Shown: positions 17,642 to 57,924, counted from the stretch's first letter. The stretch is 64,000 bases of DNA from IMGVR_UViG_3300046003_007892:124001-188000, one strand, 5' to 3'. Translations and numbers: made by a program. The notes: generated by a model from the sequence alone, not told the origin.

Positions 17642-17649
17642 GCCCCAAG

Positions 17650-24634: not shown

Positions 24635-24909
24635 AGAAAACCACCTACGAGTATGGGGTCCACGAGACCAATGCGGAGGCCTGTCAGTTCGTGGTCTGCT
24701 TCCCGGTACGCCGACATGCAGGGCGTCACTGGGGCGACCGCAAGCTGATCATGAAATGGCTGCGCAACAACGCCCCCAAGGGCAGCTACCTCACGCCGTC
24801 GCACAACTTCCGCAACGAAGCCGGGGAAGAAATCTGGATGGTTCGCGTTGAGACCTTCACGCTCGCCACCGCCCTCTACTTGGTCTTCGGTGAAGGTTTC
24901 GGCGGGTAG
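24631..24909 (+). CDS. Hypothetical protein (small-family-like)
   Basis: LIMKWLRNN...VRVETFTLATALYLVF. Confidence 0.6.
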   Translation: MKKTTYEYGVHETNAEACQFVVCFPVRRHAGRHWGDRKLIMKWLRNNAPKGSYLTPSHNFRNEAGEEIWMVRVETFTLATALYLVFGEGFGG

Positions 24910-26570
24910 ACGGAGTCCACGATCTTCTTCAGAACGCCGCCGTGGCGGTCGTAGGCGCACGCGCCGATAGCACTCGTTCGGTCCAGCTTCTGGACGGCCA
25001 TCTTCATCTGCGCTGGCGTGAATTCCTTCTGCGGCATGTAGCCGACCATCTGCATCCGGTTGTAGGGCTCAAGCTTGTCCAGGAAATTTAGGAAGATCGG
25101 CATCGGGATGCGGTTGGCCTCATAGGAGGCATAATACTTTCTCGCGAACATTTCGACGTCGTGATCGAGTGTCGCTTGCAGGATAAACGGCGGGACGTCG
25201 CCGGGACCACCAGTCCAGGATTCAAGAACGTGGGGGTCGCGGGCAATCAGGGTTTCCATGTTGGCTTGGCTCATCCGCAGGCCCTGGTAATATTTTCTGA
25301 ACTTCTCGTGGTTCTGGAGAATGAACTGCTGAACTCCAGCGGACAGCTTGCGGCCGACTGCGCGGCGAGGCGTCTCTGAGATGATCTCGATCACCTGCTT
25401 GTCTCCAAACGGAGCGATGCTCATGATGAGATTGTCAGTCTCCCCCATGGCGCACAACGGGTCAGCCATGATGCGGTCCTGCACGGACTTCGGAAGATCG
25501 CTCCACTGTATACCATTGTTGCCCAGACCGGACAGCACGATAGACGACGTGTAGAGGAATGAGATGATCTCATCGTCGGACAGTTTGCCTTGCCGCATCT
25601 GGTTGATGAAAATCTGCGGCTTGGCCGACCAGATTGCACGGTTGGACTTCGGCTCGTTGCCTTCGTAGCGGTTATTGACCGTCTGGAGGAGCTTGATGCC
25701 CTTCATGGACATGAAGACAGCCTGCGAGGGCTCGTTCTCGTGGATGATGCCCTGGCCCTCGTGCTTGGACCAGTCGTAGTCCAGGACGCCGTCGTAGCCC
25801 ATCTTGCGAAGAATCTTGTTCCAGTCCAGAGACGGGTTGAGGCTTTCTTCGTCGTCGGCCCAAGAATTCTGGGTCTCGTATTCGTCGAGGTCGCGATGAT
25901 ATTGCTCTACCGCCCCCGCGTGGGTCTCCAGTGCCTCTTCCCATTCGTCTTCGCTGTCGAAGTCCTCGTATTCTGGCTCGTCGGGCCATTCCGGGCGGGT
26001 CAGGTCGGGGTCCACGAGACGCATCTTCGTTTTTTCGAGTGCGGCCTTGTAGAGAACATTCCACAGGGCGCCGCCCTCGGTATCTACGGGGAGATCGTCA
26101 TCCGGGACTTCGTTGAACTCCGAAGATGCGTAGCGGACATCCGATACGCTCACCTTGGCGAGGTCGAGAACATTCAGCGACGGGCTGATCTCGAATACCT
26201 GGATGTATGGAGCCGTGGAAGCGAACTCGACGCCGCCTTTGCCCTTATGGAGCACGTAGTCGATAGGGTAGGCGTAGATGCCCAGCGGTGTCCGATAGCT
26301 GGACTGGGGGTTGATGCCCAGTTTGGCTCCACGGGTATTGTGGGTCTTACCGGATGCGCCCGAGACGCCGCCGTCGCGGAAGTTCTTGCCTTCGATCTTG
26401 CCGCCGTAACTGCCAGCCTTGCCCATATGGGTCAGGTTGCCGACGTCTTCCGTGTAGGAGACGAACACGTCCTTTCGGCCCTCGTAGGGACGAAGCTGAT
26501 CTTCAATCGAACGCTTGAAGTTCTGGTCGGGATTCCGTCGCTGTTCGAGGAGGATTTCGTGGAAACGCAT
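24876..26570 (-). CDS. Putative internal head protein with ART-like motifs and acidic insert
   Basis: MRFHEILLE N-terminus; PLGIYAYP, GYDGVLDY, GIIHENEPSQAVF; CTAAATA 4 nt upstream of ATG. Confidence 0.75.
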   Translation of the reverse strand: MRFHEILLEQRRNPDQNFKRSIEDQLRPYEGRKDVFVSYTEDVGNLTHMGKAGSYGGKIEGKNFRDGGVSGASGKTHNTRGAKLGINPQSSYRTPLGIYAYPIDYVLHKGKGGVEFASTAPYIQVFEISPSLNVLDLAKVSVSDVRYASSEFNEVPDDDLPVDTEGGALWNVLYKAALEKTKMRLVDPDLTRPEWPDEPEYEDFDSEDEWEEALETHAGAVEQYHRDLDEYETQNSWADDEESLNPSLDWNKILRKMGYDGVLDYDWSKHEGQGIIHENEPSQAVFMSMKGIKLLQTVNNRYEGNEPKSNRAIWSAKPQIFINQMRQGKLSDDEIISFLYTSSIVLSGLGNNGIQWSDLPKSVQDRIMADPLCAMGETDNLIMSIAPFGDKQVIEIISETPRRAVGRKLSAGVQQFILQNHEKFRKYYQGLRMSQANMETLIARDPHVLESWTGGPGDVPPFILQATLDHDVEMFARKYYASYEANRIPMPIFLNFLDKLEPYNRMQMVGYMPQKEFTPAQMKMAVQKLDRTSAIGACAYDRHGGVLKKIVDSVYPPKPSPKTK

Positions 26571-29993: not shown

Positions 29994-30803
29994 TTAGCGG
30001 CACCCCATGGCGCGTCTATACTGTGCGAAGTTTGCTTGCACCCATTGGATTACTACGCTCATGTCGTCGTTCACGAACAGAGGCCGCAATCCCCTGTTCT
30101 GGTTTTTGTTTATCACCTTCCAGGTCCCGCCATCGTTGGCGATGAAGACGATATCGCGGGGGTCAACGTCTGCTCCCCAGAACACGATCTGTTCTTCCTG
30201 ATCGCCGTGGTGGTCACACTTGACGCCTGAGTTCATGAACATGACGGCCTCTCGCCCATACTTGCTGCCGCTGTCGGCATTGCGGTAGTTGGCGTCGTAG
30301 GCGAAATTGTAGCCGCCGTGCTTTTTTGCCTCGTCTGAGAACCACGTAGTCAGCCCGAGCTTGTCCATCTCGTCCATTCCGTACTTGAAACCATAGAGGG
30401 AGATTTCGCGGGCGTTGTCCGAAAAATGGATGAGCCACGTCGTGCGAGGAATCAGGCGATCTTTCCCGAGTGTCATGTGGGCGGTGGTCGGGGCATCGGC
30501 CGGGTCGTGGTGCAAGATCGTACCGATGATATCCTGGGCGCATTCTTTCTGGATGTGCTCGGGGAGCTTGTAGAAAAAATCGGCATCATACGTGATGGAG
30601 TTGGCGAGATCGTTCCAGGTGACCTCTTCGCCCGCCGCCTCATTGGTCTCGTCGGGATAGTTGTCCACGAGCCATGACGCGATATGACTCCAGTGCTGGT
30701 AGGGGTCGAAATCTCCACCCTTCATGTACTGGAGGAAATTCGTGTTGTCGGGAGAATACTTCTCCATCACGGACTCGGCGACGATTTCGAAGTAGGTTTT
30801 CAT
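29994..30803 (-). CDS. Putative internal head protein, ART-like C-domain
   Basis: MKTYFEIVAE resembles the T4 capsid-targeting sequence; WLIHFS...NFAY...DQEEQIVFW; ATAAATA 5 nt upstream. Confidence 0.75.
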   Translation of the reverse strand: MKTYFEIVAESVMEKYSPDNTNFLQYMKGGDFDPYQHWSHIASWLVDNYPDETNEAAGEEVTWNDLANSITYDADFFYKLPEHIQKECAQDIIGTILHHDPADAPTTAHMTLGKDRLIPRTTWLIHFSDNAREISLYGFKYGMDEMDKLGLTTWFSDEAKKHGGYNFAYDANYRNADSGSKYGREAVMFMNSGVKCDHHGDQEEQIVFWGADVDPRDIVFIANDGGTWKVINKNQNRGLRPLFVNDDMSVVIQWVQANFAQYRRAMGCR

Positions 30804-30808
30804 CCACC

Positions 30809-30815
30809 TATTTAT
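30809..30815 (-). promoter_or_regulatory. Late promoter, leaderless configuration
   Basis: ATAAATA-GGTGG-ATG. Confidence 0.7.
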
Positions 30816-30850
30816 TGACTGGCCGGGCCCGGTTGTCCTATCGCTCCCGT

Positions 30851-31261
30851 ATGAACATGTCATTTGAGAGCCACGGCTTCACCTACCTGATCGGGCACCC
30901 GATCACCAAAATCGAAATCGGCAACTCGGGTGCCTATCTGCGTCTGACTGCCTTCGGCGTCGAGTATGCATTCGGAGCCTTCGGTGACTGCTGCTCGCAT
31001 AGTTGGATTGAGCACATCGACGGCGTCGCCGCTTTGCATTCTGGAATCGTTGAGGTCGAAGAAGTCACCCAGACCGTAGACGAGAAAGACAACCGGGACG
31101 AACTCGTTCAGGTGTATTTCTACAAGCTCATTACTGCGCTCGGAAATGTCACCATCGAGATGCGGAATGCCAGCAACGGCTACTACGGTGGCTGGCTGGA
31201 GACTTGCCCGCACGGCACTCCAAAGGACGTCGTGTGGAAGACCATCACGGAGGATTTCTGA
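30851..31261 (+). CDS. Conserved phage hypothetical protein
   Basis: GDCCSHSW...EMRNASNGYYGGWL. Confidence 0.75.
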   Translation: MNMSFESHGFTYLIGHPITKIEIGNSGAYLRLTAFGVEYAFGAFGDCCSHSWIEHIDGVAALHSGIVEVEEVTQTVDEKDNRDELVQVYFYKLITALGNVTIEMRNASNGYYGGWLETCPHGTPKDVVWKTITEDF

Positions 31262-31537: not shown

Positions 31538-32122
31538 ATGCGTCTGACCGAACTCTCTATCCCGCACGACCGCGAAGAACTCTCGCTGGAACTCATGGTC
31601 GCAGGCTACAGTCCGTTGGGTTCCGGCGACTTCGCCGATGTCTACCACAAGCCCGGCGCCGCCTACGTCCTAAAGGTTTTCGAGCCTCGCGACGAAGCCT
31701 ATCGGGCATTCCTGACCCTGGCCCGCTCCCATCAGGACAACCCGCATTTCCCGAAGATCATCGGGAAGCTCGTAAATATCAAAAACAAATGGTTCGCTGT
31801 TCGGCTCGAAAAGCTGGAGCGGTATCGCTACGACAGCACTCTGATCTACCGCTACATTCGCTGGCGGGATGAGCGAGGCAAGCATGACCCGCAGGGTATG
31901 TTCGCGATGGAACTCGAAGACGCGTTCGAGTTCATGGAGGAATACCCGAAACTCCAAGAAGCATGCGATCTCATCATCGACAATCTCCTCACGCAGGGCG
32001 GCCAATCCCTGGCCGGTCATGTGCCGGATTTCCGTCAGGACATCCGCAACGACAACATCATGATGCGGGGAAATACCATCGTGATCGTTGACCCTATCGT
32101 GCCCAACAAAGAGATGAAGTAG
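31538..32122 (+). CDS. Protein kinase-like fold enzyme, putative head cargo
   Basis: LGSGDFADVY, VLKV, DIRNDNIM (DxxxxN), IVIVDP; MRLTE N-terminus. Confidence 0.8.
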   Translation: MRLTELSIPHDREELSLELMVAGYSPLGSGDFADVYHKPGAAYVLKVFEPRDEAYRAFLTLARSHQDNPHFPKIIGKLVNIKNKWFAVRLEKLERYRYDSTLIYRYIRWRDERGKHDPQGMFAMELEDAFEFMEEYPKLQEACDLIIDNLLTQGGQSLAGHVPDFRQDIRNDNIMMRGNTIVIVDPIVPNKEMK

Positions 32123-34124: not shown

Positions 34125-34592
34125 ATGGTCACCAAGCCACCCAGGAAAAACAACCTCAACCTCGCGGCGCAACCGTCCGCTCAGGGCTATCGCTTCATCG
34201 ACAAAGACCCCGACATGGAAGTCGTCGTCGCCGCGATTGCCAACTCGGGCCTCACGGTCGAAGCCATCAGCGAAATGACTGAACGGCAAGGCAACAAGGT
34301 CTCCGCCGCCGCCATGGTGGGCTGGATGTACGGCAAAACCAAGCGTCCCCAGAACTACACCCTCACCGCCGTCATGCAGGCTCTGGGCTATAATCGGAAG
34401 TGGATGGAAGCCAACATGGCCCCGACCGTCTCCATCGCCGTCGCCACCGCCGCCGTGGACAACATGGTGTCGAAGTTCAAGCTCAAAGGCGGTCTGCCGC
34501 CTCGGGGCCAGAAGGGCAAGACGGCCAAGAAAGCCCTCAAGGGAAAGACGGCCAAGTCCGGTAAACCGAAAGCCTTGGAGGCGACATCGTGA
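34125..34592 (+). CDS. Cro/XRE-like HTH protein with Lys-rich tail
   Basis: GLTVEAISE...VSAAAMVGWMYGKTKRPQNYTLTAVMQALG; AAGGAG SD. Confidence 0.7.
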   Translation: MVTKPPRKNNLNLAAQPSAQGYRFIDKDPDMEVVVAAIANSGLTVEAISEMTERQGNKVSAAAMVGWMYGKTKRPQNYTLTAVMQALGYNRKWMEANMAPTVSIAVATAAVDNMVSKFKLKGGLPPRGQKGKTAKKALKGKTAKSGKPKALEATS

Positions 34593-35653
34593 TCGACCCC
34601 AAGCACCTCTCGGAGTTCATCACCTCCCCCGACGCCACCGATATCATGCAGGCTTTCTCCTCCATGGACCAGGGGCCCTTCAGAGCCTCGCTGGTGGCTC
34701 ACCTGATGACGATGTCGTCCATGGCCGCCATGACCGCGAACGCCGCTCCAGCACCCGTTCCCGCGCCCCCTGCACCGGTCCCCGACCGACCGTTCGTCTC
34801 CGAGACTGTGGAAGGACGGATTCTGGAGCGTAAGCTTCGGGGCGAGACCATTCGCAGCATCGAGAAGTCGGAGAACGTCTCCTTCCGTTTCGTTCGCACC
34901 GTTCTGGACAAAGCGTCCAAGCAAGGCGTGGACGTCGGTCGCCTCCCGGCCAAAGCCCCTGCGGCCAAAGCCCCTCCGGCCAAGCACACACTGAGCAAGG
35001 AAGATCGCGGCCTGCGTCGCAAGGAAGCCATCCGTCTTCGCTACCTCGGGATGGGTCCCAAGGAGATCGCCGTTCAACTCGACATGTCGATTGGCAACGT
35101 CGGGAATGCGATCTGGGCCGCGAAGACTGGCGACAAAGGAGAGCCCGTCACGGTCTTTCCCGATATCGACGAGACCATCCTGGCGGGAAGCATCCCCGGA
35201 CCATTCAATGTGAAGTCTTCGGGGAAACGGTTCGTCTGGGCTGATCATCCCGAGATCGAGCACGCCGTGATCGACCGCTTTCTTCAGGGCGAACGAGCCA
35301 GCACCCTGATGAAGTTCATCCGCGAGCAATCCGGCGACGACATCACCGAGAACATGGTTCTGGGCCGTCTCTACAACCGCCGCCCTGAGTTCCCCGTCGA
35401 AGTCCTCCGCGATGGTCCGATCTCGTGGATGGAGGCGTGGACGATCATGTCGGTGGTGAACAAGTCCCCCGAGGGCTGGCTGACCAAACTGTCTGATCGT
35501 CTCGGTCTTCGGGAGCGCATCACGCCGCCGCAGGATATCAACGCGATTGCGGCGCCGGAGAAGATCGCACTCATTCGGTCGGCCTACCACGCGACCATTC
35601 TCGCGCGGGGAAATACGGGAACGGTTGCCCAAACGGTCGCCCAAACGGCCTGA
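34589..35653 (+). CDS. Multi-HTH DNA-binding protein (LuxR/sigma4-like and GcrA-like HTHs)
   Basis: GMGPKEIAVQLDMSIGNV; W...LQGERASTL...ITENMVLGRLYNR. Confidence 0.6.
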   Translation: MIDPKHLSEFITSPDATDIMQAFSSMDQGPFRASLVAHLMTMSSMAAMTANAAPAPVPAPPAPVPDRPFVSETVEGRILERKLRGETIRSIEKSENVSFRFVRTVLDKASKQGVDVGRLPAKAPAAKAPPAKHTLSKEDRGLRRKEAIRLRYLGMGPKEIAVQLDMSIGNVGNAIWAAKTGDKGEPVTVFPDIDETILAGSIPGPFNVKSSGKRFVWADHPEIEHAVIDRFLQGERASTLMKFIREQSGDDITENMVLGRLYNRRPEFPVEVLRDGPISWMEAWTIMSVVNKSPEGWLTKLSDRLGLRERITPPQDINAIAAPEKIALIRSAYHATILARGNTGTVAQTVAQTA

Positions 35654-35698
35654 CCCAACGATGGCCCCGGTGGTGCAAGCCACCGGGGTTCTGTCCGT

Positions 35699-35705
35699 CT
35701 AAATA
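35699..35705 (+). promoter_or_regulatory. Late promoter, leaderless configuration
   Basis: CTAAATA-AGCC-GTG. Confidence 0.65.
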
Positions 35706-35709
35706 AGCC

Positions 35710-36480
35710 GTGCGCATAGCGGTATGTATATCTGGGCAGTTGCGAAACTGGGACCAATGCGGAGCATGGTGGGAACCTCTGTTCTCCCATCTCGCCCCCA
35801 CGTATGACGTCTTCGTCCACACCTGGGATTACCGCACGGAGCCGGGCAGCACGGTCTCGGCCCCGGTCTCCGATATCGAACTCGCCGCCTTTCGGGATTG
35901 CTTTGACCCAGTCGCCATGCAGGTTAGCCCTGCGGCCGATTATGCGTGGCTGGACGAACGAGCAGCCAGGATTCCCAACACCTGCCACCTCGTCACACCC
36001 GGACGACCATCGACCCAGCACGCCAGCCAGTTCGATTCGATGCGGCGAGCCTTCCATCTCAAACGAGAGCACGAGATCGCCGAGGGGTTCCTCTACGACA
36101 TCGTCATACGCGCCCGCACAGACATTCGCATAACCAAGCCCCAGCCCCTTGCGGCTCCAGGACGCGACACCGTCATGGGTGAACTGTTCCGTCGTCTTGC
36201 GTGGCGGCACACCCATTTCTCCGACCGTTTCTTCATCTCCGATTCGGTGACGGCGGACAAGATCGGCAACGTCTTCGCTGCCCTCCCCATGATTCGCTCC
36301 GGCGTTTTCTTTGAACCCGACAAGGACATCACGCCCGAGACCGTTCTGCATTTCTACCTTCGAATGCTGGGACTCAAAATTCAATCTATCGACGTCGCCA
36401 CCCGCCTCGTTCGATCATCTCAATACGCCGCCGCCCAGTGCGAGCTTGGGCGCGGACTGGGAGCCCATGAAACGATCTAG
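35710..36480 (+). CDS. Putative glycosyltransferase-like protein
   Basis: RIAVCISGQLR...DVFVHTWD...YDIVIRARTD...SDRFF. Confidence 0.7.
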   Translation: MRIAVCISGQLRNWDQCGAWWEPLFSHLAPTYDVFVHTWDYRTEPGSTVSAPVSDIELAAFRDCFDPVAMQVSPAADYAWLDERAARIPNTCHLVTPGRPSTQHASQFDSMRRAFHLKREHEIAEGFLYDIVIRARTDIRITKPQPLAAPGRDTVMGELFRRLAWRHTHFSDRFFISDSVTADKIGNVFAALPMIRSGVFFEPDKDITPETVLHFYLRMLGLKIQSIDVATRLVRSSQYAAAQCELGRGLGAHETI

Positions 36481-37183
36481 AATTGCCGTCTGCCTATCGG
36501 GCCAGCCCCGCACGTGGAAGACCTGTGCGGCCAACATTCGAGCTTTCTTCGACCCGGCCGGAGACGTGGATTATTTCATCTCGACCTGGACGCGGAACAC
36601 ATGGTGGAACGACGGTCAGGCGTACCTCGAAGATGCCGACACTGAAGGACTATCTGAGGCTTTCAACCCTGTTGCTCTACGGATTGAACCCCTGCCTAAG
36701 AAATTCGGATGGAACGGTCTATTCGATTCGTTCACTTCTAGTGTGCATGATAAGAAAAGTCATGAAATCGCGAACTCTTTCCTGTATGATGTTGTAGTAA
36801 AAGGCCGGTTGGATTGCGTATTTGATCCTCGCTTGACGTTCAAGCCCGGCGCAGTAGAGTCCATGACCGCCTATTCTGTAAATCATATGGAGAGAATGCC
36901 CCACGAATACTATGGGGCCAATTTCTCCGACATGTGGTTCCACTCTGGAACCATGGAGATGGACATCCTCGCCGACTGCATGCGGGATGCCGACATCATC
37001 GAGCACGAGGACTACGGCCCCGGAGTTCTTCTCTGGAACCACATGACCAAGTATCGCATCCATCCAAGCTATTCTCCCGCGATGGTGCACAACACCATCG
37101 TCCGCAAGGAGTTCGAGCATCTCGACGGCCTCGTGGATTACGAGGAGATCAGGGACCGCTTCAAGGGCTGGGTGGGACGATGA
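36467..37183 (+). CDS. Putative glycosyltransferase-like protein (paralog)
   Basis: RIAVCLSGQPR...DYFISTW...YDVVVKGRLD...SDMWF. Confidence 0.7.
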   Translation: MKRSRIAVCLSGQPRTWKTCAANIRAFFDPAGDVDYFISTWTRNTWWNDGQAYLEDADTEGLSEAFNPVALRIEPLPKKFGWNGLFDSFTSSVHDKKSHEIANSFLYDVVVKGRLDCVFDPRLTFKPGAVESMTAYSVNHMERMPHEYYGANFSDMWFHSGTMEMDILADCMRDADIIEHEDYGPGVLLWNHMTKYRIHPSYSPAMVHNTIVRKEFEHLDGLVDYEEIRDRFKGWVGR

Positions 37184-38766
37184 CCGAGACTGTAGTCATC
37201 CTCGCTGCGGGATACGGGAGCCGCATGGGACCCTACGCGGACAAAATCGCCAAGACCCTCTTGCCGGTCGGCCAGAAAGCTGTGGTGAGTCACATCATCG
37301 ACCGCTTCGACCCCCAGACCCATTTCGTGATCGCGGTCGGTCATCTCGGGACGCAGATCAAATCCTATATCGCGATGGCGCACCCTCGGCTCAACGTCAC
37401 CTTCGTGGACGTCGATATCACTGCGGCGCCCGACTCCACTTTCGGACCAAACGCGGCCGGTCCCGGCACCACCCTCTTGGCCTGTCGCCCCGACCTCGGT
37501 GAAGGCCCGTTCTTTCTCGTGACCGGAGACACCCTGTTCGAACTTCCCGCCGACCTGACGGGCAACTGGGTTGGCATTCAGCACGTCGATGATCAGACCG
37601 AATACTGCAATGTCGTCCTCGACGGCGACATGGTCATAGAGGTGGCGGACAAGGTCGAGAAACCAGGAAGCATGGCCTGGACTGGTCTTGCCCACATCGA
37701 AGATCACAGCTTCCTCGACAAGCTCGACTACGCGTCAAACACCGGCCTTCCGCCTAGCGTGGTCAGATGGTTGAACGTGCGGACCAACCAGGAGAACTCC
37801 CTCTCGCGGGGTATCCGCCACCTGACCGATATGGGCACCCTCAAAGGACGTTGCCATGAGTGGTCGGACACGGGCACCTATGCGAAATACCGAGCAGTCG
37901 CAGGGGCAGAGGGGACATTCGCCTTCGAGAAAGAGGGTGAGTTCCTCTATCGGGTCGGAGATAGAATCGTAAAATATTTTGAGAATCCCAAGATTGCCTA
38001 TGATCGCGTCTGCAAGGCGACCATGCGGGAGGACGTCTTCCCCAAGATCGTCGGCTCCAGTGGGTCCTTCTATGCATACGAGTTCGTCCCCGGCCGGACC
38101 CTATACGAAGGTCTGACGCCGGGGCGTTTCATTGAACTCACCCTCTTTCTTCACGACCGGGTCTGGGACCCCAACGGCGACCCCGTGCACCCAACGCTCG
38201 TTCATGATTTCTATGTCCGCAAGACTGAAGCTCGTCTCGCGGCCTTCATGGAACGGAACCCCGATTTCGAAGAGGCCGAGTGCGTTAACGGTTTCGAAGT
38301 CAGACCCATCGCGGAACTCCTTCTGACCATTCCCGCGCACGAGGGCGTGAAGTCTTTCATCCACGGTGATTTGCAGTTCGACAACATCATCGACGACGGA
38401 ACAAAGTTCACCCTGATTGACTGGCGGCAGGATTTCGCAGGCCGGGTCGAGTACGGCGATCTCTACTACGATTTCGCAAAACTCCTGGCTGGCATATGGG
38501 TGGATTTCAGAGCCGTGAAAACCATTCAGCCAACCGTGGACGGTGGTCGAACGACAACCCTGTCATGCTTGCCGTCGATTGGTAACACGCTCGCCTACGC
38601 GTCGATTCTACAGGCAGCGGCGGCGCGGTATGATCTGGATTTCGCTGTCGTGAAAAAAATCACCGGCCTCATCTACTTGAATATGGCGGGACTCCACAAC
38701 AATCCGCTAGACTTGTATTTCTACAGTCTAGCTCAAGTGGTCCTCTCCGGTTATGATCTCGCGTAA
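37180..38766 (+). CDS. Nucleotidyltransferase + APH/choline-kinase-like fusion
   Basis: ILAAGYGSRM...KTLLPVG; IHGDLQFDNII...LIDWR...GDLYYDFAKL. Confidence 0.88.
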   Translation: MTETVVILAAGYGSRMGPYADKIAKTLLPVGQKAVVSHIIDRFDPQTHFVIAVGHLGTQIKSYIAMAHPRLNVTFVDVDITAAPDSTFGPNAAGPGTTLLACRPDLGEGPFFLVTGDTLFELPADLTGNWVGIQHVDDQTEYCNVVLDGDMVIEVADKVEKPGSMAWTGLAHIEDHSFLDKLDYASNTGLPPSVVRWLNVRTNQENSLSRGIRHLTDMGTLKGRCHEWSDTGTYAKYRAVAGAEGTFAFEKEGEFLYRVGDRIVKYFENPKIAYDRVCKATMREDVFPKIVGSSGSFYAYEFVPGRTLYEGLTPGRFIELTLFLHDRVWDPNGDPVHPTLVHDFYVRKTEARLAAFMERNPDFEEAECVNGFEVRPIAELLLTIPAHEGVKSFIHGDLQFDNIIDDGTKFTLIDWRQDFAGRVEYGDLYYDFAKLLAGIWVDFRAVKTIQPTVDGGRTTTLSCLPSIGNTLAYASILQAAAARYDLDFAVVKKITGLIYLNMAGLHNNPLDLYFYSLAQVVLSGYDLA

Positions 38767-39223
38767 GCCCCAGCATCTCATCTTCGACGTCGATGGCGTA
38801 TTCACTGACGGGAAGTTCTACTACACCGCTGACGGCAAAGTCATGAAGGCGTTCTGCTGCCAGGATAGCGATGGTCTCAGAGACCTCATGGGCGAGTTCA
38901 ACATCCATCTCATCACCGCCGACAAGAACGGCTTCGAAATCTCTCAGGTGCGGGCCAAGGATATGGGATTCCCCATCCATCTGGTCCCCAACGCAGACCG
39001 TGCCGCGCACGTTGCCCACTACGTCAAGTTCGGTGGTGCGATCTTCATGGGTGACTCGATGACGGACATCCCGGCCCTCAGGGAGGCCACCTACGCCATC
39101 GTCCCCAAACAGTCCCGCATCGAAGTCCGCGATGAAGCCGACTACGTGACCGCCTACGCTGGCGGAGAGGGCGCCGTCTTGGACGCCTGCCTGCATCTGA
39201 AAGAGAAGTTCCGAGCCCGCTAA
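38753..39223 (+). CDS. KdsC/YrbI-family HAD sugar-phosphate phosphatase
   Basis: IFDVDGVFTDG, KAF...D..G, FMGDSMTD. Confidence 0.88.
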   Translation: MISRKPQHLIFDVDGVFTDGKFYYTADGKVMKAFCCQDSDGLRDLMGEFNIHLITADKNGFEISQVRAKDMGFPIHLVPNADRAAHVAHYVKFGGAIFMGDSMTDIPALREATYAIVPKQSRIEVRDEADYVTAYAGGEGAVLDACLHLKEKFRAR

Positions 39224-39226
39224 ATA
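39220..39226 (+). promoter_or_regulatory. Late promoter, leaderless configuration
   Basis: CTAAATA-TGGC-ATG; the TAA is the upstream stop. Confidence 0.7.
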
Positions 39227-39230
39227 TGGC

Positions 39231-39740
39231 ATGCGATATGCCGAACTGAGCGAGAAGTGGGTTGGGGCCGTCAAGACCAAATGGTCCAACGATCACATCG
39301 ACCTCTACATGGACCCGTCGCGGGCTGAGTTCATGAAACTCATGAAGGAATGGGGCACCGCCGCCCGCGCACTCGTGTCCACGCAGGGCAACCTTCTTTT
39401 CTGGCATATGGACCAAGCCCTCCACAGCGAGGCCGCAATGTCGATTGAAGGTCACGCCTGGGTCCCCGCCCATCTTGTCCTGTATCCGCCCGGCAACGAA
39501 TGTTCGATCATCATCAACGAGTTCGAGAACTTCATGTGGGATGACGACTTCGATGACGCCAACGGCGGTGGCTATAAACCCCTGCTGACCCGCGTCGTCT
39601 CGACCCTTCAGGCCAACGAGCATCTCCAGCGCATCTACGGCACGGTCGAACTCTGGGGTCTCGCCGAAGACCGTGGTCTCGACAATCCCTACATCGCCAT
39701 CACGCCGGAATGGCTGGCTGCCAACGTGGTGAAGAAATGA
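39231..39740 (+). CDS. Putative internal head protein (domain shared with 41296..42525)
   Basis: MRYAELSE; LYMDPS...ARAL...FW...ALH. Confidence 0.7.
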   Translation: MRYAELSEKWVGAVKTKWSNDHIDLYMDPSRAEFMKLMKEWGTAARALVSTQGNLLFWHMDQALHSEAAMSIEGHAWVPAHLVLYPPGNECSIIINEFENFMWDDDFDDANGGGYKPLLTRVVSTLQANEHLQRIYGTVELWGLAEDRGLDNPYIAITPEWLAANVVKK

Positions 39741-40603: not shown

Positions 40604-41299
40604 TTAAGCAGTGTAGGTAATATTTGTCAAGTTAATAGGTTTCTCATTGAGGAGATCGTATCTCTCGATCACGCTCTGAACAAACAGGGGAGAACCCTTG
40701 AGGACGCGAAGTTCGTATTCGTTCTCGCCGGTTTCCCAATCCATCCCGGCCATGATGGTGTGGTGCCAGTCAATGTGGGATGGGTCTACGACGGCGTGGA
40801 TGACCACGTTGACGCCTTCGGACTTGAGATCGCTCCAGACGGGTTCGAAATCCCAAGCATGGGGGTCGTAGGTCCAGTAGATGCCCAAGCTGGTCTGGCC
40901 GATGCGCTGGACGGTAGCCGCCCAGTTGGTCGGGACCTTCATGATGCGGTGGATGGAATACAGGCCGGAATGTTTCTCAATAGCGGTCAGGCGTGCGATG
41001 ACCTCGTCGTAGCGATTGTCGCACCACCACATCGCAAACGCACGGAACTCCGGCGTATCCTGGACGTCGATATCTTCCATGTCCGCGAATTGATCGGGGA
41101 ACGGATAGTTGAAATCACCCTCTCGCCAGTATTCAATCATGCGTGCGCCATTGTCGGAACCCTGGAACTTGCCCGGATAGGCCGCATGCGCTTGATCATC
41201 CCAGAAGAGACCCTGAACGAGGCTGTCCGTCATCTTGGCGCAGATGGCAGCCTTGTCCGTGGCGCCGACGCTTTCCGCGAGCGTGATCAAATGTCTCAT
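40604..41299 (-). CDS. ART-like putative head protein
   Basis: MRHLITLAE; IHRIM, SLGIYWT, ENEYEL. Confidence 0.65.
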   Translation of the reverse strand: MRHLITLAESVGATDKAAICAKMTDSLVQGLFWDDQAHAAYPGKFQGSDNGARMIEYWREGDFNYPFPDQFADMEDIDVQDTPEFRAFAMWWCDNRYDEVIARLTAIEKHSGLYSIHRIMKVPTNWAATVQRIGQTSLGIYWTYDPHAWDFEPVWSDLKSEGVNVVIHAVVDPSHIDWHHTIMAGMDWETGENEYELRVLKGSPLFVQSVIERYDLLNEKPINLTNITYTA

Positions 41300-42525
41300 C
41301 GGAACTCGTAGGGACGCAGTCCCGAGAAGAGTTTCTTGAAGGCCGGGTTGGCGAGCATCTGAGCGGCCGAGTGCTTCGGCACGTAGACGAACACGTCGCC
41401 GGTCGTGAAGAAGGCCATCTTGGAAGTTCCGCCGATTTCGCCCGCCGCATCGCCGAGGAGTTTGTCGAAGTCCGTGGCGGCCATGAAGGGAGCAACGGTG
41501 GTGATGTCGTCGGTCATCTGACGGTAAATCTGTTGGTGGATGGCTGAGTTGGCGTCCCAGATATAGACCGACGCCCCGAACGTGACGCCACGGACGAGGC
41601 CGTATTTGGCGTTAGCGATGAGGCTCCTGGTCGTGTTCGGTGTGGGGTCGATATGAACGATGACTTCGCGGTCCCGGACATCGAACTTCTCCATCCGTTC
41701 CGTCAGGGGGCGAGCCGATTTTCGCAACATCAAATCGCTGTCGGCGTCGAACTCAAATCCGAGACGTTCATACCAGCTTTCAAGATCGATCTGGCCGAGC
41801 GCATTCGTGTTGTCGTCCTCGGCGTTTCCGAACTCGACATCCGATCTAGGGAACAACTCCAGGTCCACGCTGAGTTGATCAGCCGTCCGCATAAGGTCGG
41901 TCATGATCTGGCGACCCTTCCCATCATGGCGTTCGCCAGCCGGAACATGGAGCCATCGAATTTCTACGGTGTCGTGGTTGAGCGCAATGAGCTTCAGGTT
42001 GCTGCGGTGATATTTTTCCGCCATCGCCTTGATGAGCGCAGCAGCGTTGCCGGTGTTCTCGATCAGGGAGCGTTTCATCTCCTCAGAGACGTCGATGATG
42101 CGCGGATTGAACATTCGCTGGAACGCCGGGTTGCCCATCAGGTCGCCCTCGGCACCAGCGGCGACATAGAAGAAACCGACCTCGGGGTCTTCGATGAAGG
42201 TGAAGAAGTTGGCCTTCTCGTATTCCCGACGCGCATCATCGACCACCGTTTGGAGATCAAAGCCCATCATGAACAGGCGGACCTCGTGGAACTGGTCTGT
42301 AACCTGACGCCAGATGTCGGCGTGGATAGCCTTGCTGGCATCCCAGAAGAAAATGTCGTTGTTGACCGCAAAGCCACGCACCATGCCGAACTGCGCATTG
42401 GCCAGCAGGGCTTCCAGCGTGTTCGCGGTTGGATTGCTGTGCACGACAACGTCGCGGCCACGAACATCAAACTGTTCGGCGCGCTCCGTGAGGTCGGACT
42501 CAGCGAGAGATATGAACTGACGCAT
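41296..42525 (-). CDS. Putative head polyprotein: repeat domain - GNAT - repeat domain
   Basis: MRQFISLAE; WLHVPAGERHDGKGRQIM...WYERLGF (GNAT); two copies of LTER..FDVR.R.V.VH..PT.NT...L.ANA..G.VRG. Confidence 0.78.
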   Translation of the reverse strand: MRQFISLAESDLTERAEQFDVRGRDVVVHSNPTANTLEALLANAQFGMVRGFAVNNDIFFWDASKAIHADIWRQVTDQFHEVRLFMMGFDLQTVVDDARREYEKANFFTFIEDPEVGFFYVAAGAEGDLMGNPAFQRMFNPRIIDVSEEMKRSLIENTGNAAALIKAMAEKYHRSNLKLIALNHDTVEIRWLHVPAGERHDGKGRQIMTDLMRTADQLSVDLELFPRSDVEFGNAEDDNTNALGQIDLESWYERLGFEFDADSDLMLRKSARPLTERMEKFDVRDREVIVHIDPTPNTTRSLIANAKYGLVRGVTFGASVYIWDANSAIHQQIYRQMTDDITTVAPFMAATDFDKLLGDAAGEIGGTSKMAFFTTGDVFVYVPKHSAAQMLANPAFKKLFSGLRPYEFR

Positions 42526-44648: not shown

Positions 44649-45983
44649 ATGATCAGAGAACTCGACTACTGGTATGGCGCGCAGACGAAGCGTTTCCTCG
44701 AACAAATCGTCCGCGCCTTCTCGGGCTATCAATACATGACCGGCTGGCGCAATGGCGACGAGCCCCAGTTGAAGATGGTCCCATGCCGGGTCGATTCTCG
44801 TGATCGCCTCGTCGGTCACATCATGCGCAACAACTCGGAGAACACCCTCCTGGCGGCGCCGATGATCACGGTGTCCCACACCGGCCTGACGATGCGCCGT
44901 GAGGACGTTCAGAACCTGACCCACATCGACACGCTCCAAATTCACGAGCGCGAGGTTGATGAGAACGGCGAGTACACGGGCAGATCGGGGAACCGCTACA
45001 CCGTGGAACGCCTGATGCCCCGGCCATTCAACATGCTGGTCAGCGTCGATATCTGGACCTCAAACCTGGACCAGAAGCATCAACTCCTGGAACAAATCCT
45101 GACCGTGATTGTCCCCACGTTCGAAATTCAGAACTCCGACAATCCGCTGGATTGGACAGCCAAGACGCACGTCGAGGTCGAGGACATCAACTGGTCCTCT
45201 CGTCAAATCCCCATCGGAACTGGCGGAGAGAACGATCTCGAAATCGCGACCATCACCCTGCGGGTTCCGATCTGGCTCTCTCCTCCGGCCAAGATCACCC
45301 AACAGCGTCGCATCGAGAAAATCATCACGAACATTCACGACGACACCATTGAGGGTGACACCGGCTCACCACACGTCGTGACGCCGGGCAACCACCGCAT
45401 CAGTGTCTCGGGCGACACCATTACTCTGCTGGGCTCCAAGGGAGCACTGAAGAATGACGCGAACGAATTCCACTCGTGGGCTGATTTGATCAACGACTAT
45501 TCGAAAGACCTTCGCCCGACCCTGAGCCAACTTCGTCTGAGCAAGAACCTCGTTCTCGAAGACGAAGACGAGATCGTGGGAACGCTTCAGTACGACAACG
45601 CGCACCCGAACAAACTCTTCTGGCAGATCGACCCCGACACCCTACCGTCCAACACCCTCTCGCCGGTTCTGGCGATCATCGACCCACTGCGGAACTGGCC
45701 CGATAACGGCCTGCCGGTTAGTGCCTCCGGTCAACGCTATCTGGTGGTCTCTGCGGTCGGTGCTTCCACTCAAGCTTGGGGCAACCTCGTCGCGTCTGAA
45801 AATGACATCATCCAATACAACAATGGTCAATGGTCGGTCGTGTTCGACGCCAGCGTGGCCATTACTGAGCGGCACTATATGGTAAACCTGAACAGAAGCA
45901 AGCAGTTGAAATGGACGGGAGAGAACTGGGTCGTGGCCATTGACGGTGACTATGCTCCCGGATATTGGCGTCTCGTGCTCTGA
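44649..45983 (+). CDS. Tail completion/sheath stabiliser (T4 gp15-like) with C-terminal extension
   Basis: YWYGAQTKRF...F, VP, MPRPFNM...DIWTSN.DQK.QLLEQIL, WT...EL. Confidence 0.7.
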   Translation: MIRELDYWYGAQTKRFLEQIVRAFSGYQYMTGWRNGDEPQLKMVPCRVDSRDRLVGHIMRNNSENTLLAAPMITVSHTGLTMRREDVQNLTHIDTLQIHEREVDENGEYTGRSGNRYTVERLMPRPFNMLVSVDIWTSNLDQKHQLLEQILTVIVPTFEIQNSDNPLDWTAKTHVEVEDINWSSRQIPIGTGGENDLEIATITLRVPIWLSPPAKITQQRRIEKIITNIHDDTIEGDTGSPHVVTPGNHRISVSGDTITLLGSKGALKNDANEFHSWADLINDYSKDLRPTLSQLRLSKNLVLEDEDEIVGTLQYDNAHPNKLFWQIDPDTLPSNTLSPVLAIIDPLRNWPDNGLPVSASGQRYLVVSAVGASTQAWGNLVASENDIIQYNNGQWSVVFDASVAITERHYMVNLNRSKQLKWTGENWVVAIDGDYAPGYWRLVL

Positions 45984-49640: not shown

Positions 49641-49844
49641 ATGATCGATTGTCTGCATCGTCCCGCGCCCTTCCACCGCATCCTCGTGGACGGCGTCATA
49701 GGCGTCATCCACAAGATCACCCATGGCCCAAAAAACACTAGACTTATCGTAGTGGTTGTGGGTAAAACAGAGCTTACAATTCCCTTCGCGGCCCTTGCTT
49801 GGGACGCGACGAATGCGCTCTGGAGACCTTTGTGCACGATCTGA
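49641..49844 (+). CDS. Possible small hypothetical protein
   Basis: Follows TTGACG-N17-TACCAT; overlaps the serS start. Confidence 0.35.
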   Translation: MIDCLHRPAPFHRILVDGVIGVIHKITHGPKNTRLIVVVVGKTELTIPFAALAWDATNALWRPLCTI

Positions 49845-57076: not shown

Positions 57077-57829
57077 ATGCCCATCGAACTCGACAAGAAA
57101 GCCGAAACCGTTCAGCGCGTGCTGCTCGACAAGGGCTTGGCCACGGCGCCGACCATGCGTGTCGCCGTCGCCATCGACATCTCCTACTCGATGAAGGATG
57201 AATTCGAGGACGGCAGCGTCCAGAAAGTTCTCGACCAGCTTCTCGGCGTCGCCAAGACGTTCGATGATGACGGCGCCTTCGACATGTGGCAGTTCGACGA
57301 CCGCACCGATTACATCGGTCAGGCGTCGGAAGCCGACTACGGCACCTACGTGCGGTCCAAGCGTCTGGGCGTCCGGGGCGGCACCCTCTACTCGCCGTGC
57401 CTGCGCGATATCACGTCGCGGATGTTCGGCGCGGCGCAGACCCAGACGACCACCCAGAAGAAGGGCGGCTTCCTCGGCTTCGGCGCCAAAACCGTGCAGC
57501 AGACGGCGAACATCGGCGGCTCCGACGAGCCCGTCATGGTCCTGTTCATCACGGACGGGGCCCCGCAGGAAACCATCTCGGCTGTCCGGGCCGTGCTGAA
57601 GGACGCGCAGAAGCACAACATCTACTTCCAGATGATCGGCATCAACAACCAGGGAGAAGAGTTCGAGTTGCTCTCGACCCTGGCCGACGAGCTTCCCAAC
57701 GTCGGCTTCGTCAAGATGAACGGCTTCCGCAACACCGACGAGCAACTCTATCGCGCCATGATCACCGACGAACTCGTCGCGTGGGTGTCGAAGTTCGCCA
57801 CGTCGGCTGCGAAACCCGCCGTCGCCTGA
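57077..57829 (+). CDS. Ter-associated vWA protein
   Basis: AIDISYSM, FDDDG, GGTLYSP, FITDG, IYFQMIG. Confidence 0.88.
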   Translation: MPIELDKKAETVQRVLLDKGLATAPTMRVAVAIDISYSMKDEFEDGSVQKVLDQLLGVAKTFDDDGAFDMWQFDDRTDYIGQASEADYGTYVRSKRLGVRGGTLYSPCLRDITSRMFGAAQTQTTTQKKGGFLGFGAKTVQQTANIGGSDEPVMVLFITDGAPQETISAVRAVLKDAQKHNIYFQMIGINNQGEEFELLSTLADELPNVGFVKMNGFRNTDEQLYRAMITDELVAWVSKFATSAAKPAVA

Positions 57830-57924
57830 TTCACCCTGCCGGGGGCGGGCAGCCGCCCCCGGTTCCTTCTCTGCTCAAAGAGTGCATTTCTAGAAAAGGG
57901 GCCCAAGTGCCGCAACGATCTTTC

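What the first reader, a model, noticed from the sequence alone, without database searches (positions are those of the whole stretch)
35699..39223. Late four-gene sugar activation/transfer cluster
Seen: a leaderless late promoter, two RIAVC.SGQ.R paralogs, a nucleotidyltransferase-kinase fusion and a KdsC-type phosphatase, all overlap-coupled. Established: kinase + phosphatase + nucleotidyltransferase is the logic of NDP-heptose and CMP-Kdo/CDP-choline type pathways. Inference: virion glycosylation or host surface remodelling rather than early DNA modification.
Basis: partly seen in the sequence, partly recalled or inferred. Interest (0 to 1): 0.6.

Follow-up and report, generated by a model that had tools for sequence, protein, structure and literature searches.

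The report
Phage sugar-activation and transfer operon
A giant lake-water phage carries a tightly packed four-gene unit that most likely makes an activated sugar and attaches it to an unknown target; its sugar-activating half resembles enzymes recently shown to build sugar-decorated phage DNA.

Summary
Four + strand genes overlap by 14, 4 and 14 nt. They sit behind a CTAAATA box that lies 4 nt before a GTG start.

- **g1 and g2** are paralogs (28% identity). They have a GT-A glycosyltransferase fold and belong to DUF7796, a family found mostly in viruses.
- **g3** fuses a MurU/GlmU-like nucleotidyltransferase to an APH/choline-kinase-fold kinase.
- **g4** is a KdsC-type HAD phosphatase.

The closest characterised system is AfhE/AfhF of RB69-like phages. 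There a kinase makes a sugar 1,5-bisphosphate, a HAD phosphatase trims it to the sugar 1-phosphate, and a nucleotidyltransferase makes the UDP-sugar. Here the defining DNA features are missing from the 240 kb held:

- the only thymidylate synthase homolog is canonical;
- there is no arabinose-5-phosphate isomerase;
- the transferases are GT-A, not GT-B.

Cellular relatives of g3 and g4 sit among sugar-phosphate enzymes and GT2 genes. In 54 of 80 viral loci, against 2 of 80 cellular loci, the fusion sits near tandem DUF7796 genes.

The TAAATA-N4-start box is real: 46 copies against 0-1 expected. It marks a tail gene and many genes with T4-like capsid-targeting N-termini, which supports late expression.

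The sugar and the acceptor remain unknown. I file this as a new variant of a known kind.

The parts
35665..35688 (+). GC-rich hairpin (9-10 bp stem) after the upstream gene. It looks like a terminator and isolates the cluster from upstream transcription.
   Evidence: Sequence read. ViennaRNA fold of 35655-35700 gives -26.5 kcal/mol.
35699..35705 (+). CTAAATA box, like the core of a T4 late promoter, 4 nt before the GTG of g1. This leaves a leaderless or near-leaderless start.
   Evidence: Genome-wide enrichment is 46 against 0-1 expected. The box stays intact in four metagenome runs; the only nearby variant is 35706 A>C in the spacer.
35710..36480 (+). g1: DUF7796 'A-type' protein, 256 aa, GT-A fold, probable glycosyltransferase.
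   Evidence: phrog_13607 at E 3e-14. AlphaFold2 model has pLDDT 92.4. Foldseek matches GT6 enzymes at prob 1.0, TM about 0.4. VIA-align gives Z 9-11.4 to many GT-A enzymes. 33 of 90 family members hit PF25072.
36467..37183 (+). g2: DUF7796 'B-type' paralog, 238 aa. A GGGAG sits 5-9 nt before its ATG.
   Evidence: 28% identity to g1, E 7e-18. A-then-B order is conserved in at least 30 viral loci. Junction sequence read.
37180..37929 (+). g3 N-terminal half: sugar-1-phosphate nucleotidyltransferase domain with the LAAGxGxRMG motif.
   Evidence: PF12804 and PF00483. NCBIfam Arch_glmU at 2e-14 and MurU at 2e-11, both far below their cut-offs. Best PDB match by sequence is 4y7t at E 8e-4. Motif residues are invariant across 28 family members.
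37930..38766 (+). g3 C-terminal half: APH/choline-kinase-fold small-molecule kinase. The HGDLQFDN and DWRQDF catalytic motifs are intact.
   Evidence: PF01636 at 3e-10. Model pLDDT 88.4. Z 15.1 to LicA and APH(4)-Ia, 13.0 to glucosamine kinase, 11.8 to NahK. hhalign to RB69 ORF052c gives 91% probability.
38753..39223 (+). g4: KdsC-type (capless) HAD phosphatase, 156 aa. It has the DVDGV and GDSMTD motifs and no SD, and is coupled to g3 by a 14-nt overlap.
   Evidence: TIGR01670 at 4e-18. PDB KdsC chains at 2e-15 to 1e-9. 50% identical to the HAD that accompanies the fusion in 82 of 160 related loci.
39221..39226 (+). TAAATA box of the next gene (start 39231). It overlaps the stop codon of g4 and marks the 3' limit of the four-gene unit.

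Best explanation
The four genes form one transcription unit driven by a T4-late-type TAAATA box. Together they make and use a nucleotide-activated sugar.

Proposed steps:
1. The kinase domain of g3 phosphorylates the anomeric position of a host-supplied sugar phosphate, giving a sugar 1,n-bisphosphate.
2. The KdsC-type HAD phosphatase g4 removes the distal phosphate.
3. The nucleotidyltransferase domain of g3 converts the sugar 1-phosphate to an NDP-sugar. This is the order shown for AfhE/AfhF.
4. The two GT-A-fold DUF7796 paralogs g1 and g2 then transfer the sugar, probably in two successive or differently linked steps, onto a macromolecular acceptor.

What is shown: gene structure, domain identities, intact catalytic motifs, paralogy, the GT-A fold, conserved linkage with DUF7796 in phages, and purifying selection.

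What is inferred: the order of reactions, by analogy with AfhE/AfhF; late timing; and the acceptor. I judge the acceptor most likely a virion component or another non-DNA glycan. The identity of the sugar is open. The upstream enzymes that accompany the fusion elsewhere (GatZ/KbaZ-like, cupin, shikimate-DH-like) are absent here, so the substrate should be a sugar phosphate the host already makes.
For: Architecture and motifs.

Link to AfhE:
- g3's best PHROG is phrog_4098. RB69 gp52:53 maps to that family at E 1e-118 and 1e-169.
- hhalign of the g3 family against the RB69 halves gives 79% and 91% probability.
- The AfhE/AfhF mechanism is described in PMC13326640.

Co-conservation of g3 and g4: the HAD cluster is present in 82 of 160 loci that hold the fusion.

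Transferases:
- GT-A fold for g1.
- DUF7796 lies next to the fusion in 54 of 80 viral loci and 2 of 80 cellular loci.
- The A-then-B order is conserved.

Functional constraint: 13 of 15 coding differences across four lake metagenomes are synonymous and there are no indels.

Late class:
- Box statistics.
- The box precedes the gp15-like tail gene at 44649.
- 17 of 47 box-bearing ORFs have a T4 capsid-targeting-like N-terminus, against 7 of 335 other ORFs (capsid-targeting properties from PMC9026906).

Non-DNA leaning:
- Canonical ThyA plus DHFR only.
- No SIS isomerase.
- Cellular neighbours are GT2, epimerase and methyltransferase genes.
- DUF7796 occurs in Catovirus, Tupanvirus, chlorovirus and CroV.
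Against: - No enzyme here has been assayed.
- The kinase fold does not discriminate substrates. Choline kinase LicA ties for the best structural match.
- DUF7796 has only one invariant Asp where GT-A enzymes carry DxD. Its Z-scores to nucleotidyltransferases (9.6-10.1) are close to those for glycosyltransferases (up to 11.4).
- g4 is not homologous to the AfhF-type HAD. Many viral cassettes lack any HAD, so the bisphosphate route is not the only possibility.
- No late sigma factor gp55 was found in the held sequence.
- The record is about 45% complete, so absent genes prove little.
- The regex for capsid-targeting N-termini was written after seeing the data.
- No RNA run holds the region.
Confidence: 0.5

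Rival explanations
1. DNA hypermodification. g3 and g4 make an NDP-sugar, for example NDP-arabinose from host arabinose 5-phosphate. g1 and g2 then attach it to a hydroxylated pyrimidine in replicated phage DNA before packaging, as in RB69, DLP3 and HY126.
For: The only characterised phage enzymes with g3's architecture do exactly this. The phage belongs to the T4 superfamily: it has topoisomerase II and a gp15-like gene, and its nearest isolates are Phosso and Atu_ph07. A Gram-negative host would supply arabinose 5-phosphate (established Kdo pathway knowledge). A late promoter is compatible, because group transfer to DNA occurs late (abstract of PMC13326640).
Against: The single TS homolog keeps the Asp and Asn that mark ordinary dTMP synthases (E. 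coli D169 and N177) and is followed by DHFR. No second TS homolog and no SIS isomerase lie in the 240 kb held. Known DNA arabinosyltransferases are GT-B, while g1 and g2 are GT-A. Only 1 of 80 related viral loci has a TS homolog within 10 kb, and it is canonical. The fusion family is common in bacteria and archaea, where it sits among glycan-type genes.
Confidence: 0.2
2. Host envelope remodelling. The NDP-sugar is used to alter host LPS, capsule or peptidoglycan precursors. This could work as an AmgK/MurU/MupP-like salvage or as a surface change that blocks superinfection or aids release.
For: The NTase domain's best solved relative by sequence is MurU. NCBIfam MurU aligns over the full domain. 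Kinase plus phosphatase plus NTase is also the logic of the Pseudomonas MurNAc recycling route (PMC5371409 listed; details from established knowledge). Cellular homologs lie near GT2 and epimerase genes.
Against: MurU and AmgK scores are far below the family cut-offs (44 bits against 250). g4 is KdsC-type, not MupP-type. A lytic phage gains little from remodelling the host surface late in infection. The tandem DUF7796 pair is almost confined to viruses (taxa).
Confidence: 0.15
3. LicCA-like phospho-alcohol activation. g3 makes CDP-choline or a related CDP-alcohol, and the product decorates a glycan.
For: Treponema LicCA has the same domain order (from memory). LicA ties for the top structural match of the kinase model at Z 15.1. 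Some source databases label family members 'choline kinase'.
Against: A sugar-phosphate-type phosphatase is translationally coupled to g3 and co-conserved with the family. GatZ/KbaZ-like, cupin (PMI-like) and shikimate-DH-like sugar enzymes are also co-conserved. No LicD transferase was found in the held record. The NTase domain scores best with sugar-1-phosphate enzymes.
Confidence: 0.05
4. DUF7796 proteins are not glycosyltransferases. They would be another kind of GT-A-fold enzyme, such as a nucleotidyl- or phosphosugar transferase. The operon would then make a modified nucleotide-sugar or a small molecule rather than a glycoconjugate.
For: There is no clear DxD motif. The conserved SGQxR loop after strand 1 recalls the GxGxR loop of nucleotidyltransferases (comparison by inspection). 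Z-scores to IspD, GlmU and Mth528 of 9.6-10.1 are near those for glycosyltransferases.
Against: The top Foldseek and VIA hits are glycosyltransferases of GT6, GT2 and GT62. Multi-copy tandem arrays are typical of glycan assembly loci. One giant-virus relative, in CroV, is annotated as a glycosyltransferase.
Confidence: 0.08

Closest known systems
AfhE/AfhF (RB69 gp52:53 and gp51; DLP3 gp82 and gp81): UDP-arabinose synthesis for arabinosyl-5-hydroxycytosine DNA (PMC13326640)
   Same: Both have a single polypeptide with an N-terminal MurU-like nucleotidyltransferase and a C-terminal APH-fold kinase, next to a small HAD phosphatase, in a T4-superfamily phage. g3's best PHROG is the AfhE family phrog_4098. 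Profile comparison gives 79% and 91% probability.
   Different: Identity is only about 23%. The phosphatase is a non-homologous HAD: KdsC-type here, phrog_1238 type there. No arabinose-5-phosphate isomerase and no 5-hydroxy-dCMP synthase signature were found. The transferases are GT-A DUF7796, not GT-B. The genes sit behind a late-type box, not inside the replication gene block.
Uncharacterised cellular and viral five-gene module: KdsC-like HAD, GatZ/KbaZ-like, cupin, NTase-kinase fusion, shikimate-DH-like
   Same: g3 is 35-41% identical over its full length to the bacterial fusions. g4 is up to 50% identical to the module's HAD. This is the true orthologous family of g3 and g4.
   Different: The window lacks the GatZ/KbaZ-like, cupin and shikimate-DH-like genes, both locally and in the 240 kb held. 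Its gene order, fusion directly followed by the HAD, is unusual. I found no published function for the module.
Large cassette of uncultured (IMG/VR) phages: radical SAM, DUF7796 A and B, DUF6071, cupin, fusion, SnoaL, SDH-like, GatZ-like, carbamoyltransferase
   Same: It has the same A-then-B DUF7796 pair upstream of the same fusion on the same strand.
   Different: The window holds a minimal four-gene version, with no radical SAM, DUF6071, carbamoyltransferase or sugar-rearranging enzymes nearby. Single homologs of two unnamed cassette families lie 34 and 46 kb downstream in the record, outside the window.
GDP-heptose (HddA/GmhB/HddC) and AmgK/MurU/MupP pathways
   Same: They share the chemical logic of anomeric kinase, HAD phosphatase and nucleotidyltransferase.
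   Different: HddA is a GHMP kinase (from established knowledge). The MurU and AmgK models score far below their cut-offs. g4 is neither GmhB-type nor MupP-type.
Virus-encoded GT-A glycosyltransferases of giant viruses, for example PBCV-1 A064R domain 1 (2p6w)
   Same: They share the GT-A fold (Z 9.6 to 2p6w). DUF7796-like models occur in chlorovirus, Catovirus, Tupanvirus and CroV.
   Different: There is no sequence-level relation to A064R. The acceptor and donor of DUF7796 are unknown.

Membership tests
AfhE-type bifunctional sugar-phosphate kinase / NDP-sugar pyrophosphorylase | N-terminal MurU/GlmU-like nucleotidyltransferase with a GxGxR loop, fused to a C-terminal APH-fold kinase with HxDxxxxN and a metal-binding Asp | tested here: met
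   The motifs LAAGYGSRMG, HGDLQFDN and DWRQDF are invariant in the family alignment.
AfhE-type bifunctional sugar-phosphate kinase / NDP-sugar pyrophosphorylase | Sequence membership in the family that holds RB69 gp52:53 (phrog_4098) | tested here: inconclusive
   g3 hits phrog_4098 at E 4e-15, but only over residues 390-511. hhalign gives 79% for the NTase half and 91% for the kinase half at about 23% identity. tblastn against phage genomes finds no RB69-like hit at 1e-5. g3 is a remote homolog, not a close member.
Afh DNA arabinosylation system | Thymidylate synthase homolog with Asn at E. coli position 169 (5-hydroxy-dCMP synthase) | tested here: not met
   One TS homolog lies in the 240 kb held. 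It keeps the Asp and Asn and is followed by DHFR. The record is only about 45% complete.
Afh DNA arabinosylation system | Phage arabinose-5-phosphate isomerase (SIS domain) beside the kinase/NTase | tested here: not met
   No PF01380 match in the held record.
Afh DNA arabinosylation system | GT-B fold DNA glycosyltransferases in the cluster | tested here: not met
   g1 has a GT-A fold and g2 is its paralog. The rest of the genome was not searched for GT-B genes.
KdsC (Kdo-8-phosphate phosphatase, TIGR01670 / NF007019) | Score above the curated family cut-off | tested here: not met
   65.8 bits against a cut-off of 106.95. The equivalog scores 60.9 against 208. g4 is a KdsC-type HAD, not a KdsC ortholog.
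KdsC (Kdo-8-phosphate phosphatase, TIGR01670 / NF007019) | HAD catalytic motifs (DxDGx nucleophile loop, GDxxxD) | tested here: met
   DVDGV at residues 12-16 and GDSMTD at residues 99-104 align with solved KdsC chains.
GT-A glycosyltransferases (here Pfam DUF7796, PF25072) | GT-A Rossmann-like fold | tested here: met
   Model pLDDT 92.4. Foldseek prob 1.0 to GT6 enzymes. Z 9-11.4 to GT2, GT6, GT62 and others.
GT-A glycosyltransferases (here Pfam DUF7796, PF25072) | DxD (or variant) metal and donor-binding motif after strand 4 | tested here: inconclusive
   There is one invariant Asp (D138 of g1, in R-x-R-x-D) at the expected place, with no second acidic residue. The position was judged from the secondary structure, not from a superposition.
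GT-A glycosyltransferases (here Pfam DUF7796, PF25072) | Direct match of g1 or g2 to PF25072 | tested here: not met
   g1 and g2 have no Pfam hit at E 0.1. 33 of 90 aligned relatives do match, and g1 matches phrog_13607. Membership is by profile kinship only.
LicCA (choline kinase / CTP:phosphocholine cytidylyltransferase) | LicD-type phosphocholine transferase partner and no need for a phosphatase | tested here: not met
   No PF04991 match in the held record. A phosphatase is coupled and co-conserved.
T4-type late promoter | TATAAATA-like -10 box without a -35 element, about 6 nt before the transcript start | tested here: inconclusive
   The VTAAATA box is enriched, with no upstream conservation. 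It is linked to a tail gene and to capsid-targeting-like genes. No gp55 was found in the held sequence and there is no transcript data.

The most novel reading that the evidence does not exclude
The DUF7796 A/B pair is a new, largely virus-specific GT-A glycosyltransferase family. Fed by an AfhE/AfhF-like activation pair, it decorates virion proteins of lake megaphages with a sugar made from a host sugar phosphate, or less likely their DNA. The window would be the minimal form of a glycosylation cassette conserved in more than 50 uncultured phage contigs.
Probability: 0.35. Interest if true: 0.75.

Novelty: new variant of a known kind. Interest (0 to 1): 0.55.

Why it matters
- **A wider role for the AfhE/AfhF chemistry.** If the model holds, this recently described route is one branch of a much wider family. 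I found at least 258 viral contigs and 270 species genomes that encode a relative of the fusion, including CPR bacteria and DPANN archaea. Their sugar product is unknown.
- **A testable role for DUF7796.** In phages the fusion is tied to a conserved pair of uncharacterised GT-A enzymes. That gives DUF7796 a specific hypothesis to test.
- **A compact system to reconstitute.** Four genes with no accessory enzymes make a small target for finding the sugar and the acceptor.
- **Consequences of the acceptor.** Virion or DNA glycosylation affects host range, defence evasion and immune recognition of phages, so knowing the acceptor matters.
- **A promoter class worth noting.** The near-leaderless TAAATA-N4-ATG class and the large set of capsid-targeting-like N-termini are useful features of Atu_ph07-like megaphages in their own right.

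Tried and rejected
Searches that found nothing useful:
- Megablast of the cluster and tblastn of g1 against 50,697 phage records gave no match.
- tblastn of g3 found only one marine virus, at 26% identity.
- The word search for g1 found 3 relatives only. I therefore used the exhaustive profile search, which found 5,264 representatives.
- The search for related loci with the DUF7796 alignment failed because no stretch was conserved enough. I reached linkage through the g3 family instead.
- A sequence search of the PDB with the DUF7796 profile gave chance hits only.
- The kinase domain alone against the PDB by sequence gave nothing.
- Literature searches for DUF7796 and for the gene combination found nothing.
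- The 'atlas' fold library was not available.

Families absent from the phage's own 240 kb: Shikimate_dh_N, GatZ_KbaZ-like, SIS, sheath, LicD, gp55 by protein and gp55 by phrog_234. Gp23 gave only a sub-threshold hit outside the window. Because the record is about 45% complete, these blanks are weak evidence.

RNA evidence: no RNA run holds the region, so timing and the 5' end could not be tested. The DNA contigs were used only for variation.

Readings considered and rejected:
- The NDP-heptose reading, because the kinase is the wrong class.
- The CMP-Kdo reading, because there is no KdsA or KdsB logic and Kdo is activated without a 1-phosphate.

Complex prediction was not used, because I do not claim that g1 and g2 bind each other.

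Full report
**Setting.** The window is bases 124001-188000 of a 240,363-bp IMG/VR virus record that CheckV rates as about 45% complete. The window encodes:
- topoisomerase II subunits;
- ClpX;
- three aminoacyl-tRNA synthetases;
- a TerC/DUF475 membrane protein;
- a T4 gp15-like tail protein.

By the topoisomerase large subunit, the nearest isolates are Sinorhizobium phage Phosso (469 kb) and Agrobacterium phage Atu_ph07 (490 kb), at about 50% identity. This is therefore an uncultured jumbo or mega phage of the T4 superfamily. Near-identical DNA occurs in several lake-water metagenomes from different studies.

**Observation.** Four + strand genes are present as described:
- g1 35710-36480;
- g2 36467-37183;
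- g3 37180-38766;
- g4 38753-39223.

They overlap by 14, 4 and 14 nt. The start of g1 is fixed: an in-frame TAA lies two codons upstream, and the conserved N-terminus begins at the GTG. g2 has a GGGAG 5-9 nt before its ATG, g3 has a purine-rich stretch, and g4 has no SD. g1 and g2 are paralogs (28% identity, E 7e-18). Contigs from four lake runs cover the unit with no indels. They show 15 coding differences, 13 of them synonymous; all 11 differences in g3 are silent. The genes are therefore under purifying selection.

**The promoter box.**
- CTAAATA sits 4 nt before the GTG of g1 and follows a -26.5 kcal/mol hairpin.
- Across the record TAAATA occurs 90 times, against 8-18 in Markov-1 simulations.
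- TAAATA followed after 4-5 nt by ATG or GTG occurs 46 times, against 0-1 expected.
- ATG at spacing 4 alone occurs 34 times.
- The base before the box is never T, and nothing resembling a -35 element is conserved upstream.

This matches the core of the T4 late promoter TATAAATA, which works without a -35 element (established knowledge of T4 gp55 promoters). It would place the transcript start at or just before the start codon.

Several lines tie the box to late genes:
- The box precedes the gp15-like tail gene at 44649.
- 17 of 47 box-bearing ORFs begin with M-R/K-x-aromatic or aliphatic...(L/I/V/M)-x-E, against 7 of 335 other predicted genes. I wrote that pattern after seeing the data.
- These N-termini look like the T4 capsid targeting sequence. 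There the first 10 residues of IPIII suffice, positions 4 and 7 target the protein, and positions 8 and 10 direct cleavage by the prohead protease (PMC9026906; PMC3012670).
- The topoisomerase, synthetase, ThyA and DHFR genes lack the box.

I could not find gp55 in the held half of the genome, and no RNA run holds the region. 'Late' and 'leaderless' are therefore well-founded inferences, not observations. The next gene (39231) has its own box overlapping the stop of g4, and no box lies inside the cluster. The four genes thus form one unit.

**g3 and g4.**
- g3 has an N-terminal nucleotidyltransferase domain (PF12804, PF00483). Its best NCBIfam models are Arch_glmU and MurU, both far below their cut-offs. 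Its best solved relative by sequence is 4y7t.
- g3 has a C-terminal APH-family kinase domain.
- A 28-member alignment shows that the GxGxR loop, the HGDLQFDN catalytic loop and the DWRQDF metal site are invariant.
- A model of the kinase half (pLDDT 88.4) matches LicA choline kinase and APH(4)-Ia at Z 15.1, glucosamine kinase at 13.0 and NahK at 11.8. The fold is certain; the substrate is not.
- g4 is a capless HAD of the KdsC type with intact DVDGV and GDSMTD motifs. It scores below the KdsC family cut-offs.

**The known precedent.** A 2026 paper shows that RB69, DLP3 and related phages carry arabinosylated 5-hydroxycytosine DNA (PMC13326640). It describes the donor pathway, as established for phage HY126:
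- an arabinose-5-phosphate isomerase;
- AfhE, a bifunctional enzyme with a MurU-like N-terminal domain and a kinase C-terminal domain, which phosphorylates arabinose 5-phosphate to the 1,5-bisphosphate and later makes UDP-arabinose;
- AfhF, a HAD phosphatase that removes the 5-phosphate.

The two halves of RB69 gp52:53 map to phrog_4098 (E 1e-118 and 1e-169), which is also g3's best PHROG. Profile comparison of the g3 family with the RB69 halves gives 79% and 91% probability at about 23% identity. The kinase alignment runs through the catalytic and metal loops. g4 shows no similarity to the RB69 phosphatase. g3 is therefore a remote homolog with the same architecture, paired with a non-orthologous phosphatase of the same superfamily. 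It works like AfhE/AfhF but is not a member of that system.

**The true family of g3 and g4.** Full-length relatives of g3 (35-41% identity) are common in bacteria and archaea and in viral contigs. At least 270 species genomes and 258 viral contigs hold one. I clustered all ORFs around 160 such loci.

The core module, shared by cells and viruses:

| Gene | Loci (of 160) |
|---|---|
| Fusion (g3 family) | 155 |
| GatZ/KbaZ-like protein | 133 |
| Small cupin related to the phosphomannose isomerase C-domain | 123 |
| Shikimate-DH-N-like dehydrogenase | 109 |
| KdsC-like HAD, to which g4 belongs (up to 50% identity) | 82 |

Cellular neighbours include GT2, epimerase, methyltransferase and SIS/HAD genes. 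This points to a rare sugar made from a ketose phosphate and used in a glycan.

The window's phage lacks the GatZ-like, cupin and dehydrogenase genes, both locally and in the 240 kb held. It should therefore start from a sugar phosphate that the host already makes.

**g1 and g2.**
- Pfam finds nothing, and PHROGs gives phrog_13607, of unknown function.
- The exhaustive profile search finds 5,264 representatives. 33 of 90 aligned members match DUF7796.
- The AlphaFold2 model of g1 (pLDDT 92.4) has a GT-A fold. Foldseek matches GT6 enzymes at probability 1.0, and VIA-align gives Z 9-11.4 to hyaluronan synthase, BoGT6a, Mnn9, chondroitin polymerase and many others.
- Predicted viral structures of the same family occur in uncultured tailed phages and cyanophage S-SKS1. 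They also occur in giant viruses: Catovirus, Fadolivirus, Tupanvirus, a chlorovirus and CroV. Atlas clusters are 67-100% viral.
- One Asp is invariant where GT-A enzymes carry DxD, and an SGQxR loop follows strand 1. The glycosyltransferase assignment is therefore likely but not proven.

**Linkage.** DUF7796 genes lie within 10 kb of the fusion in 54 of 80 viral loci but only 2 of 80 cellular loci. In at least 30 viral loci a g1-like gene is immediately followed by a g2-like gene, in that order. The pair is an old, order-conserved unit specific to phages.

Most of these loci are part of a larger cassette with radical SAM, DUF6071, carbamoyltransferase and SnoaL-like genes. The window holds the smallest version seen: A, B, fusion, HAD.

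**DNA or not.** The defining features of the DNA system were tested and not met in the sequence held:
- The only TS homolog keeps the Asp and Asn of ordinary thymidylate synthases and is followed by DHFR.
- There is no SIS isomerase.
- The transferases are GT-A, whereas the known DNA arabinosyltransferases are GT-B.
- Only one of 80 related viral loci has a TS homolog nearby, and it is canonical too.

Together with the cellular contexts and the giant-virus relatives, I judge a non-DNA acceptor more likely, most plausibly a virion component given the late-type box. The missing half of the genome and the absence of any assay keep the DNA reading alive at about 0.2.

**Verdict.** The acceptor claim is unproven. 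This is a new variant of a known kind, with a moderately interesting open question attached: what the phage-specific DUF7796 pair glycosylates, and with what sugar.

Noticed in passing
whole record; in the window e.g. 24876-26570(-), 29994-30863(-), 31538-32122(+), 39231-39740(+), 44649-45983(+): A promoter-like class VTAAATA-N4(-5)-ATG occurs 46 times in 240 kb, against 0-1 expected. It has no -35-like conservation, which implies near-leaderless mRNAs for about 13% of genes.
   Followed up: partly
window 29994-30863(-), 40604-41299(-), 41296-42525(-); many more outside the window, e.g. G000:18922-19698 and 73961-74326: About 17-24 proteins of varied length open with MK/MR-x-Y/F/L-...-(L/I)-x-E. 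This resembles the T4 capsid targeting sequence and its prohead protease cleavage site, and suggests an unusually large set of capsid-packaged (ejected) proteins. The link to T4 rests on N-terminal pattern only.
   Followed up: partly
window 11307 and 12264 (+); seven more copies in the record (G000:23527, 64074, 69401, 70146, 84435, 95786, 195816): A second repeated motif, cTTGTCAAGTAAATA, occurs 9 times at variable distance from start codons. It may be a different promoter class or a regulatory site.
   Followed up: no
window 15655-15730 (+): ARAGORN calls a tRNA with anticodon CUA (labelled Pyl, that is, an amber-reading tRNA) inside or overlapping an ORF at 15490-16371. TAG is used as a stop in the cluster (end of g1), so I assumed no recoding.
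   Followed up: no
window 17497-19596, 49799-51151, 51752-53548: Three aminoacyl-tRNA synthetase genes: a class II D/K/N type, SerRS and a class I LysRS. The window also holds ClpX (2199-3479, - strand) and a TerC/DUF475 membrane protein (57286-58989). This is typical megaphage cargo.
   Followed up: no
G000:190837-191604 (outside the window; L168:7-777): One protein combines a CHAP peptidase domain and a PAAR motif. It may be a tail-spike tip with a cell-wall hydrolase.
   Followed up: no
G000:192154-193293 and 193290-193811 (outside the window; L168): A canonical thymidylate synthase has two unaligned stretches of about 25-30 residues (query residues ~105-135 and ~185-210) relative to the best-matching solved chain. 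A DHFR gene follows it directly.
   Followed up: partly
loci L012, L014, L020-L071 (IMG/VR contigs): A conserved cassette of about 20 genes in uncultured phages. Its order is radical SAM, DUF7796 A/B, DUF6071, an unnamed 271-aa family, cupin, NTase-kinase fusion, SnoaL-like, SDH-like, GatZ/KbaZ-like, carbamoyltransferase, then several unnamed families. I found no publication on it.
   Followed up: partly
window 35706: The only variant near the g1 promoter in lake populations is A>C in the 4-nt spacer, seen in three of four runs. The TAAATA box and the GTG are unchanged.
   Followed up: yes
window 34589-35653 (+): The gene just upstream of the cluster encodes a 354-aa protein with a weak sigma-70 region 4-like helix-turn-helix (E 1e-4, below the cut-off). 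It may be a transcription factor.
   Followed up: no
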